From contig CM075980.1 in the NCBI GenBank assembly GCA_038087875.1, positions 44,082,001 through 44,146,000 on the forward strand: 64,000 nucleotides of DNA, read 5' to 3'. The position numbers and the translations under genes were made by a program. This DNA comes from Malacoraja senta (Eukaryota). Within the stretch, counting starts at the first letter, position 1, and each line of letters starts with the position of its first letter. The notes below the pieces were generated by a model, which saw only the letters and a list, made by a program, of their open reading frames with translations, ran no database searches and was not told the DNA's origin. Positions 15,308 through 63,945 of the stretch are shown piece by piece.

Positions 15308-16358
15308 TATTCCACCACTCACCCATTCCCCCAACGCAACCCGTTCCCCCAACACAATTTTCTACCCCTCAGCCATAACCCCTAACTGTGCAGGCACGGC
15401 TCATTTCTCCTCATCCCCCAGCACTGCCTCTCCCTCCTCTTCATGTGTGGGAGGGGAGGAGGGAAGTGGGGTGTGTGGGAGAGGGGTGTGTGTGGGCGGG
15501 GAAGGGGTGTGTGGGCAGGAGGGAAGGGTGTTGGGGTAGGAGAGAGGGGAGTGGGGGCGGGGGGAGGGGTGTGGGGTGGGGGGGAGAGGTGTGGGTGCGG
15601 GGAGAGGGGTGTGGGTGCAGGGGGGTTGTGGGGGGAGGAGGGGTGTGGAGGCGGGGGAGGGGTGTGGGGATGGGGTGGGGTGTGGGGGCAGGGGGGATGT
15701 GGGGGATGGGGGGTGTGGGCGGGGGGTTGTGGGGGGGAGTGGGAGGGGGAGGTGGGGAGGGAGGGGGAGAGCTCGGTGAAAAGACGGGGGAAGAGCCATG
15801 GGGGATAAGGCAGTATCACGGGGAGGGGGCAGGAGCCAGCGAGGGGGACCAGAGGGGAAGGGGCTGGAGCTGGTGCTGCGATGGGGACTCACAGCGGGCG
15901 CTGATCACTGGTCGTTCTCCTCCGCCAGGATCAGAGTCTCCGCTTTCCGTTTGGCAACATCGGCAACATCTCCGACTCCATGCTGGGCCGGGCCGCTTCT
16001 GGTCTGTCCGAAATTCTGGTTGGAGACCTCCGCCGGCCATCCTCAGCTCCAGTCAAGACACGATGGCGCAGGAAGAGGCGGACCGTCCCGCGGAGTGACA
16101 GGAGAAAAGACTCATCTGCGCGGCGCTGACTGGCAGGAGAGGAAATCGATCTGCGCACGCGAGGTTTTTAAGATTTTTAAATCTAGCTAACTTTTACAAT
16201 AAGCCACCGATCGGAACAAAGTTTTGTGCGCTCACAGTACAGGAGAACGGTGAGTGAGCTGGTGAAAAATCGTAGCGCTATCGCGTACTGATTTTGCGCA
16301 AATAGAAAAAACACGCAAACCGGAGGATAAGAAGATCAGAGTTATAGTTATGTATAGA
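15308..16358 (-). mobile_element. Non-autonomous Helitron, 3' end missing
   Basis: Minus strand starts A|TCTATACATAACTATAACTCTGATCTT (Helitron-type 5' TC terminus); G/C-rich low-complexity interior; no 3' hairpin-CTAG. Confidence 0.55.
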
Positions 16359-22606: not shown

Positions 22607-23066
22607 TTTTACAAACTATGAAGTTTGACATTACAAAGTGCCAGTAAAATTCCTCTTGTCTTGTCTTTGGATGAGCAAGCTGTCGGAACAGCAATAAGAA
22701 TCTGGCCTTTCTAAATGGTCATAATTGAAGTGGGCAATGGTCATGGGAATGATGGCAACCGACTGGTCTCTCCAGCGCATTTCAGTGTCTGTTTGTAGTC
22801 ATGGATTTTGCTACATCTCTCCTATTTTAGTTTGGAGATACAGCGCAGAAACAGGCCCACCACACCGACCAGCGATCGTCGCACATTAACACAAGCCTAC
22901 ACACACTAGGGTCAATTTACACTTATACCAAGTTAACAAACCCAAGCCAATTAACCTGCAAACCTGTACGTCTTTGGAGCGTGGGAGGAAACCGAAGATC
23001 TCGGAGAAAACCCACGTGGTCACGGGGAGAACGTAAAATTCCATACAGACAAGCACCCGTAGTCAG

Positions 23067-23710
23067 TGTAGTGACAGTCTTTATGACATCTCAAGGATTT
23101 AGTCCTCGATAGTCACTAATATGTTGATTATATGTCAGAAGGTAATCGTACGCACCCACGAGCCCTCCACGAGACATCCAAAGCCGTCGAACGATGAATA
23201 TTCCAAAACGTCTCTTGATTAATAGTTTCTTTATTGAAGTACAAAACAGTAAGAGTTCATAAAAGCTTCTTCTTGTATGAGTACGTTTCAATCATACTCG
23301 TGGTCATGCTCGTGCATGGTCGAGAACGATGTCTGTAAAGGTAACTGGTTATAATTATAACATACTGAGTTATGGCCCTGTCCCACTGTACGAGTTCATT
23401 CAAGAGTTCTCCCGAGTTTGCCCTGATTCGAACTCGGAGATTTACGGTAATGACCGCTCGTAGGTACTCGGGGCTCTCGTGGACATTTTTCAACATGTTG
23501 AAAAATCTTCCCGAGTCTTCCCGAGCTTACCGCGTTTCCCGAGTACCTGCCGTTAGCGTTACAAGCCGCTAAGAGACGTCCCGAGCTCCGACGTACCCGC
23601 TACGTACATTCTACGTGCTTACCACGAGTTTGATTTTTTTTAAAACTCGGGAGAGCTCTTGAATGAGCTCGTACAGTGGGACAGGGCCATTAAGCTAAAT
23701 GGCTACTACA
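23067..23710 (-). mobile_element. Solo LTR (~324 bp excluding the nested MITE)
   Basis: TGTAGT...ACTACA termini; 5-bp TSD GTCAG (23062-23066, 23711-23715); AATAAA on the minus strand. Confidence 0.75.
23373..23689. mobile_element. PIF/Harbinger MITE
   Basis: TIRs TGGCCCTGTCCCACTGTACGAG; TTA TSD (23370-23372, 23690-23692). Confidence 0.9.
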
Positions 23711-24131
23711 GTCAGCATTGAACCCGGGTCTCCGGCGCTGCTAGTGCTGTAAGGCAGCAACTCCACCGTTGCGCCAGCGTGCCACCCTATTGTCCCAAGC
23801 TGTACCAGTCTCCCATGAAATGCTCGAGCATTCTTGCCTACTATTTCCAACAATGCAGCAATTTTACAGTAGATACACATTCAAATGTATTGTTTGCTCA
23901 ACAACTTTGACTGACTAGATCATCCACTATTCTGCACATAGAACTAACATGCATGGCACAGTCTAAAAAGACCAAACTTCACAGTGCATGGCTGTGTGCA
24001 GTGTTTGAGTACCAACTGCCTGGGATGCTTCTGCAAGTAGAGTATGCAGGCATCAGAAACGTACGTGTGTGAACTGGAAGTGGGATGAGGAAAAGAAGAA
24101 GAATTAGGTAGGAGGATACAGTCACCCTCAC

Positions 24132-24211
24132 CAGTTTCAATTTGTTGTTGGCCATGAGTTCAGAAATGAGCTCGCCAGCAATGGCGTCCATGCATTGGTC
24201 TGAAACCAATC
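24132..24211 (-). other. Candidate 80-nt exon (unassigned)
   Basis: Branch-like CACTAAT, acceptor TAG, open frame LVSDQCMDAIAGELISELMANNKLKL, donor CTG|GTGAGG; no homolog recognised. Confidence 0.35.
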
Positions 24212-24357
24212 CTAATTGATACAGATTATTAGTGGTGAGTGATTGGGCTGTGGCGAATTGAACAGGGTCAAGGGCTAATAGTTTTATTGCTAACGTTCCA
24301 GGATATGACGTTTGAAGATACTCTCATTAATCTGCACTAGACAAGATGTCATTGAAC

Positions 24358-24895
24358 TTCATACAGGTGCACAGTAGAGAGCATACTGACTGGCTGCATC
24401 GTGGCCTGGTTCGGCAACTGGAACGTCCAGGAGCGGAAAAGACTGCAAAAAGTTGTGACCACAGCCCAGTCCATCACCGGCTCTGACCTCCCCACCATCG
24501 AAGGGATCTATCGAAGTCGCTGCCTCAAAAAGGCAGCCAACATCATCAGAAACCCACACCATCCTGGCCACACACTCATTTCACCGTTGCCATCGGGAAG
24601 AAGGTACAGGAGCCTGAAAACGGTATCGTCCAGGTTCAGGAACAACTTCTTCCCTACAGCCATCAGGCTATTAAACACAACAACAAATAAGCTCTGAATT
24701 ACAACAGACTATTATAATTATTGCACTATATGTGTTTATTTATTGAGTATATGTGCATGTGTATACACACACTGAACTTTTTTTCTCCTGATATGTATTA
24801 TGTTTACATGTTCTGTTGTGCTGCAGCAAGCAAGAATTTCGTTGTCCTAACTGGGACACATGACAATAAAACACTCTGGACCCTTGACTTGACTC
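24358..24895 (+). mobile_element. Rex1/Babar LINE 3' fragment
   Basis: YRCTVESILTGCIVAWFGN...HHPGHTLISPLPSGRRYRS...RFRNNFFPTAIRLLN; (CTTGA)n tail. Confidence 0.9.
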
Positions 24896-35690: not shown

Positions 35691-35939
35691 TATTTTTGAA
35701 TTTGGGAATAAACCTGCACTTCAAAAATTGGCCATCAGTGGTGCATCTAGATTCAGTATAGACCATCTGTACTGGAGTTGTCTTTGACTATAATTACCAA
35801 TGCATGTACAGACAAGGAGGAAACATTGCGTCCAAGTAATGCAACATCCGATCACATGTGGCTCAGATGCTGCGTCATCATGACATAGATGATTCTTGAG
35901 CTCATGTCCTGCATGTGTGACTTGAACAGAAAACCCTAA

Positions 35940-36190
35940 GCTTAGTACTAACAGGATAGTACTAACAGCGTGGTACTAACAGCATAGTACTAATAGGATT
36001 AAACTAACAGCATAGTATTAACAGCTTAGTACTAGTAGCATAGTAATTGCATAGTACTAACAGCATAGTAGTAACAGCATGGTACTAACAGCATAGTACC
36101 AACAGCATAGTACTACCGGCATGGTACTAACAGCATAGTACCAACAGCATAGTGCTATCGGCATAGTACTAGCAGCATAGTATTAACAGC
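35940..36190. repeat. 14-bp minisatellite (CATAGTACTAACAG)n, ~18 copies
   Basis: Seen directly; the unit contains the palindrome TAGTACTA. Confidence 0.9.
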
Positions 36191-36229
36191 TACACTGATG
36201 GATGAGGAATTGAATGTGGTGGCCTCATT

Positions 36230-39706: not shown

Positions 39707-40577
39707 AAGGGCTGTCCCACTGCAGCGACCTAATACGCGAGTTTGGAAGAGTTTGCCCGAGACTCATACTCACAGCATGGTCGACACGAGGTCCTAGGAG
39801 GTCTTTGTAACTCTCCTTCATGCTCGAGAGTAGTCCCCGCGTACTCGAGGCCTCAGCTAGGTCGCGGCGTTTTTTTCAACATGCTGAAAAATGCCCGCGA
39901 GTAAAAAAAGATCGCCATGGAAAAAATTGATATTTTTTTGCTCGTAGGTTTAGTCGAGGTAGGTCATAGTAGGTCGGCATGTTATCCTAGGTAATCAAAG
40001 GCAATCGAAGATAGTCGAAGGTAAAGCTCGTTGAGAAAAAAAAGGTAAGTAAACCGACCGGTAATGTTAAATGTCCGCTAAACTTTATTAAATGTTGTCT
40101 GGCTTCTTAAAAGTGTCTCCACTCCTTCTCCCCCCTTCTCTCCCCTTCTCTCCCCCTCTCTCCACTTCTCTCCCCCCCCCACCCCCCTCTCCGCGCTCTC
40201 TAAAGGACTTACTGTTACTGTGACAGCCGTCTTTTACCTTCCTGTTCATCGCGGGTGTGAATTTCAGACAGCGCTCCCACGCTTTCNNNNNNNNNNNNNN
40301 NNNNNNNNNNNNNNNNNNNNNNNNNNNNNNNNNNNNNNNNNNNNNNNNNNNNNNNNNNNNNNNNNNNNNNNNNNNNNNNNNNNNNNNNNNNNNNNNNNNN
40401 NNNNNNNNNNNNNNNNNNNNNNNNNNNNNNNNNNNNNNNNNNNNNNNNNNNNNNNNNNNNNNNNNNNNNNNNNNNNNNNGCTGACGGTCGATCCAGCTCG
40501 AGGTTTTTCAGGCGAGTGCCCTGGAGCTTGAAGGTCGAAGACAGCTGCTGAAAAGTTGCGTCAGTGGGACAGGCCCT
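39707..40577. mobile_element. PIF/Harbinger non-autonomous element (spans an N gap)
   Basis: TIRs AAGGGCTGTCCCACTG / CAGTGGGACAGGCCCT; TWA flanks. Confidence 0.75.
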
Positions 40578-40919: not shown

Positions 40920-42735
40920 TAGTTCAGTTTTACATATACAGCGCGGAACCAGGCCCTTGGCACTGAGTCCACACTGACCAGCGATCCCCGCACACTAATG
41001 GCCCTGTCTCACGGTGCGAATCCACCCATGAGTGATCCCGAGTTTAAAACAAATCAAACTCGTGGTAATCACGTAGAATTAACGTAGAGGGAACGTCGGA
41101 ACTCGTAACGCTAACGGCAGGTACTCAGGAAACTTGTTAACTCGTGAAAATCTTTCAACATGATGAAAGATTTCCACGAGTCAAATTTACTCTTGAAGTA
41201 AAAATTTTAAAACTTTTAAACTCGTTGTAAGAACGTAGTAGCCCGTGAGTTTACCGTAGTGACTCGTGAGTCTTCCGTGGGCACTCTTTAACTCAGCGGG
41301 ACAGGCAGCATCTCTGGAAAGAAGGAATGGGTGACGGGATGAAGTTTCCAAAATTCTGCTGCGTCTTTGTGTTACTCCAGCACTGTGTGTTCACTTTTTG
41401 TCAACCAGCATCTGCCCTTTGTTGTGTATGACATTATTTGTATCCGTGACAGTTGATTGTCGCTCCCTTCAGTTTCCCAGGGGGTCGGGACGGGACTGGA
41501 GTTGGGAGGGAAAGGTGGGGGGGGGGAGGGGAGTGGAGGGGGGGGGTGGGGTGACTTAGTACGGGAGACAAGTGTAGGAGAGGTGTACTGACTGTGTGGG
41601 CAGACACTTTGGTAGTGATTGCCCATGGGGTTCACTGTCGAGGACTTCATAATGCAGAGAGCATTATAAACAGTTGCCGCAAAAAAAGATTTTGTGTGGA
41701 TCTGGTATATCTGGGTATTGAAGGCGCTTCTGGTCTGCAGTGTGCAATACAGTGCATCTTTAGAAAGGAAAAATACAAAACATGTCAATCCCACTGGATA
41801 GGCCTTAGTCATGGTGCTGTGCAACACGGAAACAGGTCCTTCGGCCCAGCTTGGCCGTGCCGTCCAAGTTGGCATCTTGGGATAGTCCTATTTGCCTGCA
41901 TGTGGCCCTCTAAACCCTTCCCATCCATTTATCTGTCGTTAATAACCTCAAGAAAATATTAAGTCTACGTGAGCCTGCTTCAGTTTCCTGGGTCCAACTC
42001 AGAGAGAAGTCTCCCCCCTTGCCAGGGTTAAACGCTCCACTGTTTATAATGCTCTCTTCATTATGAAGTCCTCGACAGTGAACCCCATGGGCAATCACTA
42101 CCAAAGTGTCTGCCCACACAGTCCGTACACCTCTCCTACACTTGTCTCCCGTACTAAGTCACCCCAACCCCTTCTCTCCGGAGATGCTGCCTGTCCCGCT
42201 GAGTTAAAGAGTGCCCACGGTAGACTCACGAGTCACTACGGTAAACCCACGGGCTACTACGTTCTTACAACGAGTTTAAAAGTTTAAAATTTTTACTTCA
42301 AGAGTAAATTTGACTCGTGGAAATCTTTCATCATGTTGAAAGATTTTCACGACTTAACAAGTTTCCCGAGTACCTGCCGTTAACGTTACGAGTTCTGACG
42401 TTCCCGCTACGTAAATTCTACGTGATTACCACGAGTTTGATTTGTTTTAAACTCGGGATCACTCGTGGGTGGACTCGCACCGTGAGACAGGGGTTTAACA
42501 CTACCCTACACACACTAGGGATGATCTACATTTTATACCAAGCCAATTAACCTACAAACCTGTATGTCTTTGGAGTGTGGGAGGAAACCGAAGAACTCGG
42601 AGGAAACCCATGCTGGTCACAGGGAGAACGTACAAACACCGTACAGACCGCACCCGTAGTTGGGATTGAACCCGGGTTTCAAGCGCTGTAAGTGCTGTAA
42701 GGCAGCAACTCTACCGCTGCGCCACGGTGATGCCC
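40920..42735 (-). mobile_element. HE1 SINE split by a long-TIR Harbinger element
   Basis: SINE tail at 40920-40998, remainder at 42496-42735. Confidence 0.8.
40999..42495. mobile_element. Foldback PIF/Harbinger derivative with composite long TIRs
   Basis: TAA TSD (40996-40998, 42496-42498); outer arms ~325 bp plus inner arms ~125 bp; body related to the 23373 MITE. Confidence 0.85.
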
Positions 42736-57120: not shown

Positions 57121-58475
57121 ATCATGGCAATAGTAAATCAATAAACCAATTAACGGGATTAATACTTGCACACATGAATCAGATATTTTGTCACTGATTG
57201 ACAGTTAAACAAATATATTAAACATTTTCTTATCTTTAAAAAAGGAAATTATGAAAGAAATTCAGTACCTCAATTTTGTAATAAAGCAAAATACCACTTC
57301 TGTCAATATTGTTCCATTATTACTATAAAAATGTATAAACATGTTACTATATTTAATAATATTTACAAGGTACAGCTTAAGTGCAGTTCAAAAATGATAG
57401 ACAATTTAAAACATGTGAATTTTTAAATATTATGAGCTTTTAAAATTCACCTTTGCACAATAATACACAATTTATTTACTTTTTAAGAAATCTTTTCCTC
57501 AATGTATCAACTTTACATTTACTGTTAACCCTTGGTGTCAACTACTTGAGCAGACAGGACTTGGTTTGGTGGTTTTCATAGCTGCCATGTTTTTTCATCC
57601 ATGTCAAATCATCATAAATTAAACTCTTGATTTAGGTACAAGGATAGAAAAGGTTTAGAGGGCACATTGGCCAATCGGGGGTAATTGGGACAACTCATTA
57701 TCCATATACAAATTGAGTCAGTTTCTCAACAACTCTACGACGCTGTATTTTTAATGGTTTCTCTGTAGGTACAGTAATGTATTTATTTTAGTAATAAAGG
57801 TAATGGGTTGTGGTTGAATATCCTGGAGATTATTTCTCAAATGATAAGCCCTTTAATTTGTTAATGTGTAGGAGGAACTGCAGATGCTGGTTTAAACCGA
57901 AGATAGACACAAAAAGCTGGAGTAGCTTAGTTGGACTGGCAGCATCTGTGGAGAGAAGGAATGGGTGATGTTTCGGGTCGAGACCCTTTTTCAGATATAA
58001 TAATAATTCTTTCTGTAAATCAAGTCATCCAAAATCCCTGTTCATCCCCTCATTTCAATCAGAAACTTGATTCCATCACCAAGTTTATTTCAAAGATTAC
58101 AGGATTAAAAGTGTTGGTAGTCGTAGTAGAAGGAATTAATTGTAATTTTACATCCTTGTTACTATTTAAAATAAGTACGAATTTCCTCTCCCAATTCTTC
58201 CATATTATTCTCAGCCTGTTTATGTTGTGATACTTGTAATGCCTTTAATGCTAGAAGCAATTTGACCTAATAACAGGGTAGACACAAAATGCTGGAGTCT
58301 CAGGCAACATCTCCTGAGTGAAGGTATGGGTGGCGTTTCGGGTCGAGACTCTTCTTCAGACCTAATAACAGTTATATTTCTCCTAATGTGAGGGATACTA
58401 GATTGGAAAAACTGCAGAAGGAAATTTTACGAGCTATTCTTTTGAAACACGATAATCCTTAAAAAGATACTGTAA

Positions 58476-59277
58476 TGGGGCTGTCCCACTGTACGAGCTA
58501 ATTCAAGAGTTCTCCCGAGTTTCCCCTGATTCGAACTCGGAGAATTACGGTAATAGCTGCTCGTAGGTACTCGGGGCTCTCGTGGACATTTTTCAACAGG
58601 TTGAAAAATCTTCACGAGTCTTCACGAGCCTACCGCGTTTCCCGAGTACCTGCCGTTAGCGTTACGAGCCGCTAAGAGACGTCCCGAGCTCCGACGTATC
58701 CGCTACGTACATTCTACGTGCTTACCACGAGTTTGATTTTTTTTTAAACTCGGGAGAGATCTTGAATGAGCTCGTACAGTGGGACAGGGCCATTAAGCTA
58801 AATGGCTACTACAGTCAGCATTGAACCCGGGTCTCCGGCGCTGCTAGTGCTGTAAGGCAGCAACTCCACCGTTGCGCCAGCGTGCCACCCTATTGTCCCA
58901 AGCTGTACCAGTCTCCCATGAAATGCTCGAGCATTCTTGCCTACTATTTCCAACAATGCAGCAATTTTACAGTAGATACACATTCAAATGTATTGTTTGC
59001 TCAACAACTTTGACTGACTAGATCATCCACTATTCTGCACATAGAACTAACATGCATGGCACAGTCTAAAAAGACCAAACTTCACAGTGCATGGCTGTGT
59101 GCAGTGTTTGAGTACCAACTGCCTGGGATGCTTCTGCAAGTAGAGTATGCAGGCATCAGAAATGTATGTGTGTGAACTGGAAGTGGGATGAGGAAAAGAA
59201 GAAGAATTAGGTAGGAGGATACAGACACCCTCACTCGGGAGAGCTCTTGAATGAGCTCGTACAGTGGGACAGCCCCT
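58476..59277. mobile_element. PIF/Harbinger MITE containing a copied 442-bp segment and a duplicated right end
   Basis: Outer TIRs TGGGGCTGTCCCACT / AGTGGGACAGCCCCT with TAA TSD (58473-58475, 59278-59280); 58793-59234 matches 23690-24131. Confidence 0.9.
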
Positions 59278-59976
59278 TAAGGAGTAGAGCAATAATGGAT
59301 TTTAAAGTTTTCTTGTGTTCTACATTTCTATAAAGTAACCAAATAATTAATACATAATAAAAGACTATAATTGCAGAAAATCTAAAACTTTTTAGCTAGG
59401 CTTTAAAATATACAGCAAAGTCAGAAATACGGACTCTTGTACAGCTTTTAATGTGAAAGATATTTTATTTTATTTATTTATACTATATTTTATTTATTAT
59501 ATTGAATGAAAACTAATTTTAACCGAAGTTTTATGAGAACATGCAGTTACAATTATTCTCATCTCATCAGGACACAAGCTCCGAAACAGTAACCTCTCCA
59601 GAAAAAGAGCTGGTCTGAAAACACTTGGTGAGGTTTCTTCAATTCTGGCATAACTTTGAATTTGGCACCACTTGCCACATGCAGCTACAGTGTGGCTCGA
59701 AGGCAAGAAATATTGCAGTAAAAAAACAATTTACAATTTTAATCGTTTTAAATAAAGTGAAGATTGGGCATANNNNNNNNNNNNNNNNNNNNNNNNNNNN
59801 NNNNNNNNNNNNNNNNNNNNNNNNNNNNNNNNNNNNNNNNNNNNNNNNNNNNNNNNNNNNNNNNNNNNNNNNNNNNNNNNNNNNNNNNNNNNNNNNNNNN
59901 NNNNNNNNNNNNNNNNNNNNNNNNNNNNNNNNNNNNNNNNNNNNNNNNNNNNNNNNNNNNNNNNNNNNNNNNGATA

Positions 59977-63651: not shown

Positions 63652-63945
63652 TTTGTTTAGTTTAGAGATACAGCGCGGACCCACTGGGTCCAACGATCCC
63701 CACACATTAACTATCCTCCACCCACTAGGGACTCTTTTTACATTTACTAAGCCAATTAGGCTACAAACCTGTACGTCTTTGGAGTGTGGGAAGAAATCGA
63801 AGATCTCGGAGAAAACCCACGCAGTTCATGGGGAGGACGTACACACACCGTACAGACAGCACCCATAGTCGCGATCGAACCCGGGTCTCCGGTGCTGGAT
63901 TCGTTGTAAGACTGCAACTCTACCGCTGGGCCACCATGACCGCCA
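63652..63945 (-). mobile_element. HE1 SINE
   Basis: Reverse-complement HE1 match. Confidence 0.8.

What the first reader, a model, noticed from the sequence alone, without database searches (positions are those of the whole stretch)
58476..59277. 442-bp segment copied 35 kb into a MITE, ending exactly at a predicted 5' splice site: possible intron-RNA-templated insertion
Seen: 58793-59234 equals 23690-24131 with only 3 substitutions. The MITE bodies at 23373 and 58476 differ at more than 10 sites and have different TSDs (TTA vs TAA), so they are independent insertions. The 58-kb MITE has two right ends: the donor's (...ACAGGGCCA-TTA) and its own (...ACAGCCCCT-TAA). The copy carries only the right tip of the solo LTR and half of the SINE, so the 23.7-kb locus is the donor. 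The copy stops at 24131, which is the G of CTG|GTGAGG on the minus strand, right after a candidate 80-nt exon. Inference: a break in MITE B primed on the homologous MITE A sequence, and synthesis ran to the 5' end of the template. This geometry is what reverse transcription of an excised minus-strand intron would give. Alternative: DNA-templated strand invasion resolved at the 2-nt AC microhomology.
Basis: partly seen in the sequence, partly recalled or inferred. Interest (0 to 1): 0.75.

Follow-up and report, generated by a model that had tools for sequence, protein, structure and literature searches.

The report
MITE patched with neighbour copy's flank
A small jumping-gene relic in a skate genome was repaired using a sister copy 35 kb away as template, and the copying ran 442 bases into that copy's flank; this is a clean example of a known repair scar, and nothing supports the idea that an excised intron RNA was the template.

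Summary
Bases 58793-59234 equal 23690-24131 with 3 substitutions, two of them CpG>TpG in the copy. The copy lies inside a Harbinger-type MITE, between a donor-type right end and the MITE's own right end. The net insertion is 485 bp, equal to 23647-24131. It enters through 38 bp of shared terminal-repeat homology and leaves at a 2-nt AC microhomology.

Locus A is the donor. There the segment continues a nested SINE / hAT-like element / MITE A context.

Contigs from three related species (about 4.5% divergent) carry MITE B's right end plus flank, so MITE B is old. The copy is young (0.7% from its donor) and appears limited to this species' lineage.

This matches single-copy "Pack-TIR" formation by DNA-templated gap filling or template switching, described in animals (PMC8277862).

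The intron-RNA reading rests only on the copy ending at a GTGAGG motif.
- 169 equally good "donor plus open exon" sites occur in this window.
- No indexed RNA run holds the putative exon.
- Its peptide has no vertebrate homologue.
- Its acceptor is ordinary.

Verdict: real feature, a new member of a known kind. RNA templating is not excluded, at about 3%.

The parts
22942..23063 (+). 5' half of a tRNA-derived SINE at the donor locus, split by later insertions
   Evidence: Aligns to SINE copies at 42538-42660 and 63749-63870.
23064..23369 (.). Left part of a roughly 326-bp hAT-like non-autonomous element inserted in the SINE. MITE A later inserted near its right end.
   Evidence: Ends TGTAGT.../...ACTACA and an 8-bp TSD-like pair GTAGTCAG / ACAGTCAG, read from the alignment. 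Inference only; the family was not tested.
23373..23689 (.). MITE A: 317-bp Harbinger-type MITE flanked by TTA (23370-23372 and 23690-23692). It is the homologous entry point of the template.
   Evidence: Terminal inverted repeats of 48 nt at 95.8%.
23647..24131 (+). Maximal donor tract of 485 bp: the last 43 bp of MITE A, the TTA, the 17-bp hAT-like tail, the SINE 3' half and about 335 bp of unique DNA.
   Evidence: Identical to 58750-59234 except at 4 sites.
24132..24211 (-). Not supported as an exon.
   Evidence: One open frame only. No RNA holder. No vertebrate homologue. Acceptor pyrimidine tract 55%, ordinary.
58476..58749 (.). MITE B, left end and body of B's own type. TAA target-site duplication at 58473-58475.
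   Evidence: 16 differences from MITE A in this part. A contig from run X1 matches 58335-58498 exactly, across the left junction.
58750..58787 (+). First copy of the 38-bp terminal-repeat block TCGGGAGAG[A]TCTTG...GGGACAG. The switch from template B to template A lies somewhere inside it.
   Evidence: Shared by A and B. The single private A at 58759 contrasts with C in both MITE A and the second copy.
58788..58792 (+). Donor-specific MITE terminus GGCCA. B's own terminus is CCCCT.
58793..59234 (+). 442-bp copy of the flank of MITE A (23690-24131). The last two bases, AC (59233-59234), are microhomology with B's ...AAAC|TCGGG.
   Evidence: 3 substitutions in 442 bp. SINE half at 58813-58895, 100% identical to 23710-23792.
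59235..59277 (+). MITE B's own right end: the second copy of the 38-bp block plus CCCCT. It is followed by the TAA target-site duplication at 59278-59280.
   Evidence: Contigs of X1 (exact) and of three related species (4-4.6% divergent) start inside this end at 59254-59260 and run into the right flank.

Best explanation
This is a DNA-templated repair or replication scar, a single-copy 'Pack-TIR'. MITE B, an old 317-bp Harbinger-type element, suffered a break. The cause was either its own excision followed by gap repair, or a stalled fork at its hairpin-prone ends.

Inferred steps:
1. A growing 3' end carrying B's right terminal repeat paired with the same repeat of the paralogous MITE A, 35 kb away on the same scaffold.
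3. The new strand let go and re-annealed to B by a 2-nt AC microhomology, 40 nt behind the point where it had left. This is why a 38-bp piece of the terminal repeat now stands on both sides of the insert.

Shown: the structure, the direction A to B, the two junction types, the old age of MITE B, and the young age of the copy.
Inferred: the order of steps, the cause of the break, and that the template was DNA.
For: - Change of template: 17/284 differences between the MITE bodies against 3/475 afterwards, p = 1.3e-5.
- The net insertion is exactly A 23647-24131 (485 bp). It enters through 38 bp of homology and leaves at AC microhomology, with no loss of B sequence and both TAA duplications kept.
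- Donor context at A is nested and native: SINE halves and a hAT-like element flank MITE A.
- The MITE family has about 1e5 copies by contig depth, yet the template used is only 35 kb away. A random pick would be that near with probability about 3e-5, assuming a 2.5-Gb genome. This is the cis preference known for ectopic DNA gap repair.
- Tan et al. 2021 (PMC8277862) describe this class in 100 animal genomes. Single-copy Pack-TIRs arise by transposition-independent gap filling, 59.8% are intrachromosomal and mostly near the parent, median microhomology is 2 bp, and the TE predates the capture.
- Here MITE B's right end plus flank is present in three related species about 4.5% divergent, while copy and donor differ by 0.7%.
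- In X1 the shared segment has about 2.2-2.6 times single-copy depth, and depth rises by about 26 (48.5 to 74.8) near the right junction, which I read as a second contig. In relatives X6 and X13 depth is about 1-1.3 times with no such rise. This last point is suggestive only.
Against: - No read or contig listed bridges 59234/59235 or the whole element, because contigs break in the highly repeated MITE.
- The empty MITE B was not seen directly in a relative.
- DNA and RNA templates give the same product, so the DNA nature of the template rests on priors and on the lack of evidence for a transcript.
- One extra mutation (A at 58759 against C at 59244) must be assumed under every model.
- The end of the tract does coincide with a good donor-like motif (chance 0.3-0.8%).
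- A and B are separated by a 193-N run (40287-40479), so the 35-kb distance depends on the scaffold.
Confidence: 0.85

Rival explanations
1. Intron-RNA-templated repair. The broken + strand end in MITE B annealed to an excised or nascent minus-strand intron RNA containing MITE A. A reverse transcriptase (LINE RT or Pol theta) extended it to the RNA's 5' end at the splice donor (24131). The end was then joined by AC microhomology.
For: - The tract ends at CTG|GTGAGG, with an 80-nt stretch upstream that is open in one frame.
- A random end falls on a site of this quality with probability 0.26%, or 0.8% allowing for the 2-nt ambiguity.
- RNA-derived patches at breaks are documented in human cells and polymorphisms (PMC5110952; PMC11390984 listed).
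- The genome is rich in LINE RT genes.
Against: - No run in the index that looks like RNA holds any of the exon's sampled words. Only one DNA-like run of the same organism does.
- The peptide has no vertebrate homologue among 1.84e9 representatives. The single hit is a repeat motif in an unrelated ankyrin-like protein.
- The acceptor pyrimidine tract is 55%, reached or exceeded by about a quarter of all AG sites in the window.
- 169 equally good candidate donor+exon sites exist in 64 kb of TE-rich DNA where no ORF of 110 aa or more looked like a host gene (by eye; not searched).
- The insert shows no RNA hallmark: no splice, no poly(A), no untemplated bases.
- The AC ambiguity means the copied tract may end 2 nt short of the supposed RNA end.
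- The 38-bp duplication needs the same return-behind step as the DNA model, so RNA adds a step without explaining more.
Confidence: 0.03
2. Aberrant transposition (end bypass or transduction). The transposase mobilised MITE A's right end together with flanking DNA, and this fragment integrated into MITE B.
For: P elements can capture flanking DNA this way (cited in PMC8277862). The inserted block starts with a complete MITE A right end.
Against: - There is no second terminal repeat or TWA site at the donor's 24131/24132 (CCCTCAC|CAGTTT).
- There is no target-site duplication around the inserted block in B.
- The left junction lies in homology and the right in a 2-nt microhomology, which are marks of copying, not of integration.
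- The donor is intact.
Confidence: 0.03
3. Assembly artefact: a chimeric join of reads from locus A and locus B, close to a contig end (N run at 59773-59972).
For: An N run lies 500 bp to the right of the element. No listed contig bridges the inner junction.
Against: - The copy differs from the donor at 3 sites, two of them CpG decay, which a chimera would not produce.
- The structure is orderly: a full MITE with both TAA duplications.
- X1 contigs match exactly across both outer junctions.
- The shared segment has about twice single-copy depth in X1, and depth rises by about 26 near 59194-59234, which I read as a second contig.
Confidence: 0.03

Closest known systems
Single-copy Pack-TIRs formed by transposition-independent gap filling in animals (Tan et al. 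2021, Nat Commun, PMC8277862)
   Same: Foreign DNA between the intact ends of a TIR element. The parental copy is retained, on the same chromosome and near. There is a 2-bp microhomology at a breakpoint. The TE is older than the capture. The element is single copy.
   Different: Here the parental segment abuts another copy of the same MITE family. One breakpoint is therefore a 38-bp homologous entry through the terminal repeat rather than a microhomology, and a second, donor-type MITE end was carried in. The carrier is a Harbinger-type MITE in a cartilaginous fish.
P-element-induced gap repair copying non-homologous sequence from ectopic templates (Gloor, Nassif, Engels and colleagues; cited in PMC8277862; details from my own knowledge)
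   Same: Homology search by the transposon's own sequence, synthesis running on into the DNA next to the ectopic copy, cis preference, and non-processive synthesis finished by annealing.
   Different: Those were experimental events after induced excision. Here it is a fixed natural event, and excision as the cause of the break is only inferred.
Filler DNA at transposon excision sites in grasses (Wicker et al. 2016, PMC5023962; Roffler and Wicker 2015, PMC4423477)
   Same: Fillers from a few bp to several kb, copied from elsewhere by SDSA-type repair.
   Different: There the TE is usually replaced by the filler. Here the TE is fully kept and the filler sits inside it.
Class 2 templated sequence insertion polymorphisms, proposed to derive from reverse-transcribed RNA (Onozawa and Aplan 2016, PMC5110952)
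   Same: A patch of a few hundred bp from a distant locus, the donor retained, microhomology at a junction, no target-site duplication and no poly(A).
   Different: In those cases RNA origin was argued partly from donor types such as spliced cDNAs (PMC5110952; I did not read that paper's section on RNA origin). Here the patch is colinear with genomic DNA, enters by long homology to a repeat, and no transcript is known.

Membership tests
PIF/Harbinger-type (Tourist-like) MITE | 3-bp TWA target-site duplication | tested here: met
   TTA on both sides of MITE A (23370-72, 23690-92). TAA on both sides of MITE B (58473-75, 59278-80)..
PIF/Harbinger-type (Tourist-like) MITE | Terminal inverted repeats, small size, no coding capacity | tested here: met
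   Inverted ends of 48 nt at 95.8%. Length 317 bp. Only short chance ORFs.
PIF/Harbinger-type (Tourist-like) MITE | High copy number | tested here: met
   Summed contig depth over the MITE is 2-3 million against about 20 for single-copy flanks in X1, and similar in three relatives. This is an order-of-magnitude figure only.
PIF/Harbinger-type (Tourist-like) MITE | Ends shared with an autonomous element encoding a DDE transposase and a Myb-like protein | not tested
   No autonomous partner was looked for. Earlier notes of this scan call the family Harbinger-type.
Single-copy Pack-TIR by gap filling | Non-self sequence lying between both intact ends of a TIR element, with a retained parental copy elsewhere | tested here: met
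Single-copy Pack-TIR by gap filling | Homology or microhomology at the breakpoints, and no target-site duplication around the captured block | tested here: met
   38-bp homology on the left, AC on the right, no duplication of B sequence other than the homology block.
Single-copy Pack-TIR by gap filling | The TE without the capture is present at the orthologous site of outgroups | tested here: inconclusive
   The right end of MITE B plus flank is present in X3, X6 and X13. In X6 and X13 the captured segment is at about single-copy depth with no junction-side contig. No contig spans the element.
Single-copy Pack-TIR by gap filling | Single copy (not re-mobilised) | tested here: inconclusive
   The depth of the unique part in X1 is about twice single copy, as expected for donor plus one copy. 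Depth from contigs is a poor copy-number measure.
RNA-templated insertion from an excised intron | The end of the tract is the 5' end of a real intron (a donor used in vivo) | tested here: inconclusive
   No RNA run holds the exon. No homologue of the peptide. The motif alone is expected by chance at 0.3-0.8%. RNA data for this species seem to be lacking.
RNA-templated insertion from an excised intron | An RNA hallmark in the insert (splice junction, poly(A), untemplated bases) | tested here: not met
   The insert is colinear with genomic DNA and has clean junctions.

The most novel reading that the evidence does not exclude
The template was RNA. A break in MITE B was extended by reverse transcription on a minus-strand intron (excised or nascent) carrying MITE A, and synthesis ran off at the intron's 5' end. 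This would be a germline, fixed case of intron-RNA-templated break repair in a vertebrate, and a concrete route by which intron sequence can be moved.
Probability: 0.03. Interest if true: 0.8.

Novelty: new member of a known kind. Interest (0 to 1): 0.27.

Why it matters
This is a very legible natural record of how a cut-and-paste element picks up foreign DNA. The repair strand entered a paralogous copy through the shared terminal repeat, ran on into that copy's flank, and came back by a 2-nt microhomology.

It shows that, in a genome with about 1e5 copies of one MITE, neighbouring copies serve as ectopic repair templates. Such events create composite elements with three ends. This adds a cartilaginous-fish Harbinger case to the Pack-TIR catalogue. 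Another report of this scan describes a TDP2 exon captured by a TIR element in this same window.

It does not open a new mechanism. The RNA idea would matter for intron mobility and for RNA-templated repair, but it has no support here.

Tried and rejected
- RNA test of the donor. Two run searches found no RNA holder of the putative exon. Small RNA-like runs of other species hold only 8-16% of the 1-kb stretch.
- The single read-laying run was therefore spent on the copy locus. Contigs break inside the hugely repeated MITE, so neither the inner junction nor an empty MITE B in relatives could be bridged. The many 'skips ~488' joints are ordinary paralogous MITE copies, not the orthologous empty site.
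- Protein test of the exon. There was one hit only: a repeat motif of an unrelated 1097-aa ankyrin-like protein, dismissed as chance. A 31-aa query has limited power.
- Test whether the 'exon' is antisense to a decayed LINE. TE homology on the + strand starts only at 24362, and the two retrieved homologues are short fragments. Inconclusive.
- 'Solo LTR' claim. No other copy in the window, and unique depth. Unverified.
- Locus B as the source and A as the copy: rejected because the SINE and the hAT-like element are continuous around MITE A.
- Capture of a free DNA fragment by end joining: rejected because the left end of the block lies in 38 bp of homology.
- The N runs were located but neither read nor filled.

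Full report
**1. The observation**

- MITE A occupies 23373-23689 (317 bp, TGGCCCTGTCCC...GGGACAGGGCCA) between two TTA triplets.
- The element at 58476-59277 begins TGGGGCTGTCCC and ends GGGACAGCCCCT, between two TAA triplets.
- Inside it, after a body that differs from MITE A at 17 of 284 positions (last differences at 58745 and 58759), comes a donor-type terminus: CAGGGCCA plus TTA.
- Then follow 439 further bases identical to 23693-24131, apart from 59163 C>T, 59167 C>T and 59225 T>A. The first two are CpG>TpG changes in the copy.
- The density of differences drops from 6.0% to 0.63% (Fisher p = 1.3e-5).
- After 59234 the sequence resumes with TCGGGAGAGCTCTTG...GGGACAGCCCCT, which is MITE B's own right end.

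The net gain is 485 bp, equal to A 23647-24131. Because the first 38 bp of that block are the terminal repeat shared by A and B, the left junction can lie anywhere in 58750-58787. The right junction has 2 nt (AC) of ambiguity. The result is a 38-bp direct duplication of the repeat around the insert.

**2. Direction**

At locus A the copied segment is in its native, nested context.

- A SINE is split into 22942-23063 and 23710-23795.
- It is split by a roughly 326-bp element with ends TGTAGT.../...ACTACA and a TSD-like pair GTAGTCAG / ACAGTCAG.
- MITE A sits inside that element, 17 bp from its right end.
- The copy at locus B starts with the TTA, these 17 bp and only the 3' half of the SINE.

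A is therefore the donor. 23800-24600 has no other copy in the window, and contig depth there is at single- to two-copy level.

**3. Independent sequence data**

Earlier notes of this scan identify the genome as a skate. Run searches gave DNA-like runs of the same organism (X1, X2) and of five other organisms.

Laying contigs of X1, X3, X6 and X13 on 58100-59760 showed:
- The MITE family is extremely abundant. Summed depth is 2-3 million against about 20 for single-copy DNA, so contigs break inside it.
- X1 contigs match exactly across both outer junctions (58335-58498 and 59255-59760).
- In all three other species a roughly 1060-nt contig starts inside MITE B's right end (59254-59260) and follows the right flank at 4.0-4.6% divergence. 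MITE B was therefore inserted before these species split.
- The unique part of the captured segment is represented in X6 and X13 by one contig. It runs on past 59234 (X6) or past 59203 (X13), where its alignment stops, into sequence unlike locus B, so it is the donor orthologue. Its depth is about 1-1.3 times single copy.
- In X1 the depth is about 2.2-2.6 times single copy. Depth also rises by about 26 (48.5 to 74.8) from about 59194 towards the junction. I read this as a second contig; it is not among the listed pieces.

Together with the 0.7% copy-donor divergence against about 4.5% between species, this suggests a young, lineage-specific capture into an old MITE. The depth argument is suggestive only. 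No listed contig bridges 59234/59235.

**4. Mechanism**

No B sequence was lost, both TAA duplications are intact, and the insert enters through homology and leaves through microhomology. Those are the marks of copying by a wandering 3' end, not of integration. Two equivalent routes fit.

(a) MITE B excised. The gap was refilled from the sister chromatid from both sides. The left nascent strand, ending in the terminal repeat, re-invaded the paralogous MITE A, copied about 450 nt into A's flank, dissociated, and annealed through AC with the right nascent strand, which had meanwhile copied B's right end.

(b) A replication fork stalled in the hairpin-prone MITE. It switched to MITE A and back, returning 40 nt behind its point of departure.

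Either route explains the 38-bp duplication. Under every model, one later or synthesis-associated mutation is needed for the A at 58759 against the C at 59244.

Among about 1e5 family members, the template used is 35 kb away. By chance this has probability about 3e-5, assuming a 2.5-Gb genome. It is the expected cis preference of ectopic repair.

**5. Comparison with the literature**

Tan et al. 2021 (PMC8277862) catalogued 370 Pack-TIRs in 100 animal genomes.
- They conclude that single-copy ones arise by transposition-independent gap filling.
- 59.8% are intrachromosomal, and most lie near the parental copy.
- Microhomology, with a median of 2 bp, is present at a breakpoint in 67.6%.
- The TE predates the capture.

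The present case meets each testable criterion. Fillers after transposon excision are also well known in grasses (PMC5023962).

The particular feature here is that the parental segment adjoins another member of the same MITE family. One junction is therefore a true homologous entry, and a second MITE end was imported. That makes the path of the repair strand unusually easy to read.

**6. The intron-RNA reading**

The geometry is right: a + strand 3' end extended on a minus-sense RNA would stop at that RNA's 5' end. RNA-derived patches at breaks are also documented (PMC5110952). But everything depends on 24132|24131 being a real donor.

- Only one frame of the 80-nt 'exon' is open.
- Its peptide finds a single hit in 1.84 billion representative proteins, a repeated motif of an unrelated ankyrin-like protein.
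- No RNA-like run holds any of its sampled words.
- Its acceptor pyrimidine content (55%) is reached or exceeded by about a quarter of all AG sites in the window.
- None of the window's ORFs of 110 aa or more looked to me like a host gene. They look TE-derived or low-complexity, judged by eye and not searched.
- GTRAG sites preceded within 50-250 nt by an AG and an open frame occur 169 times on the two strands of the window. A random end therefore meets one with probability 0.26%, or 0.8% with the 2-nt ambiguity. Among thousands of notes made on this genome, such a coincidence is expected now and then.
- The insert carries no RNA hallmark.

I put this reading at about 3%. It is not refuted, because RNA data for this species appear to be lacking.

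**7. Other rivals**

- Aberrant transposition is disfavoured. There is no terminal repeat or TWA site at 24131/24132, and no duplication around the block.
- An assembly chimera is disfavoured by the three substitutions (two CpG decays), the orderly architecture, and the X1 contigs. An N run 500 bp to the right and the lack of a bridging contig still call for a long-read check.

**8. Verdict**

Its most likely origin is DNA-templated gap filling or template switching between neighbouring MITE copies. It is a new and very clear member of the known single-copy Pack-TIR class. The RNA-templated headline is unsupported. This scan noted the same stretch once more under the same title, and it noted other templated insertions in Harbinger MITEs of this genome. 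I did not test those.

Noticed in passing
window 23064-23709: A roughly 326-bp element with ends TGTAGT.../...ACTACA and a TSD-like 8-mer pair (GTAGTCAG / ACAGTCAG) splits a SINE. It looks like a hAT-type MITE, and MITE A is nested in it 17 bp from its right end. That makes three TE layers in 900 bp.
   Followed up: partly
window 40287-40479; also 1228-1427 and 59773-59972: There are three N runs. Two are exactly 200 long and one is 193 long. The 193-N run lies between donor and copy, so the 35-kb distance depends on it. The run at 59773 is only 500 bp from the composite MITE. They were located only, not read or filled.
   Followed up: no
window 41002-41219 / 42275-42492 (also 41201-41325 / 42170-42294 and 41542-41674 / 42039-42171): A large nested inverted-repeat structure, 95-98% complementary over about 1.5 kb. 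Its outer arms are 82% similar to the right third of the MITE (23576-23692). It may be a foldback or head-to-head pair of a related MITE family.
   Followed up: no
window 59163, 59167: Both transitions that separate copy from donor are CpG>TpG in the copy. This fits germline methylation of the composite MITE.
   Followed up: partly
window 35911-36216: A tandem array of a 14-bp unit, about 22 units.
   Followed up: no
window 15380-16200: A G/C-rich low-complexity stretch, open in several frames on both strands (Pro-rich and Gly-rich translations). It may be a CpG-rich repeat or a degenerate minisatellite.
   Followed up: no
window 24362-24720 (+): The 3' tail of a retroelement ORF (…CTVESILTGCIVAWFGN…FFPTAIRLLN), just beyond the putative exon. 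I guess (not tested) that it accounts for the small shares of words held by RNA-like runs of other species.
   Followed up: partly
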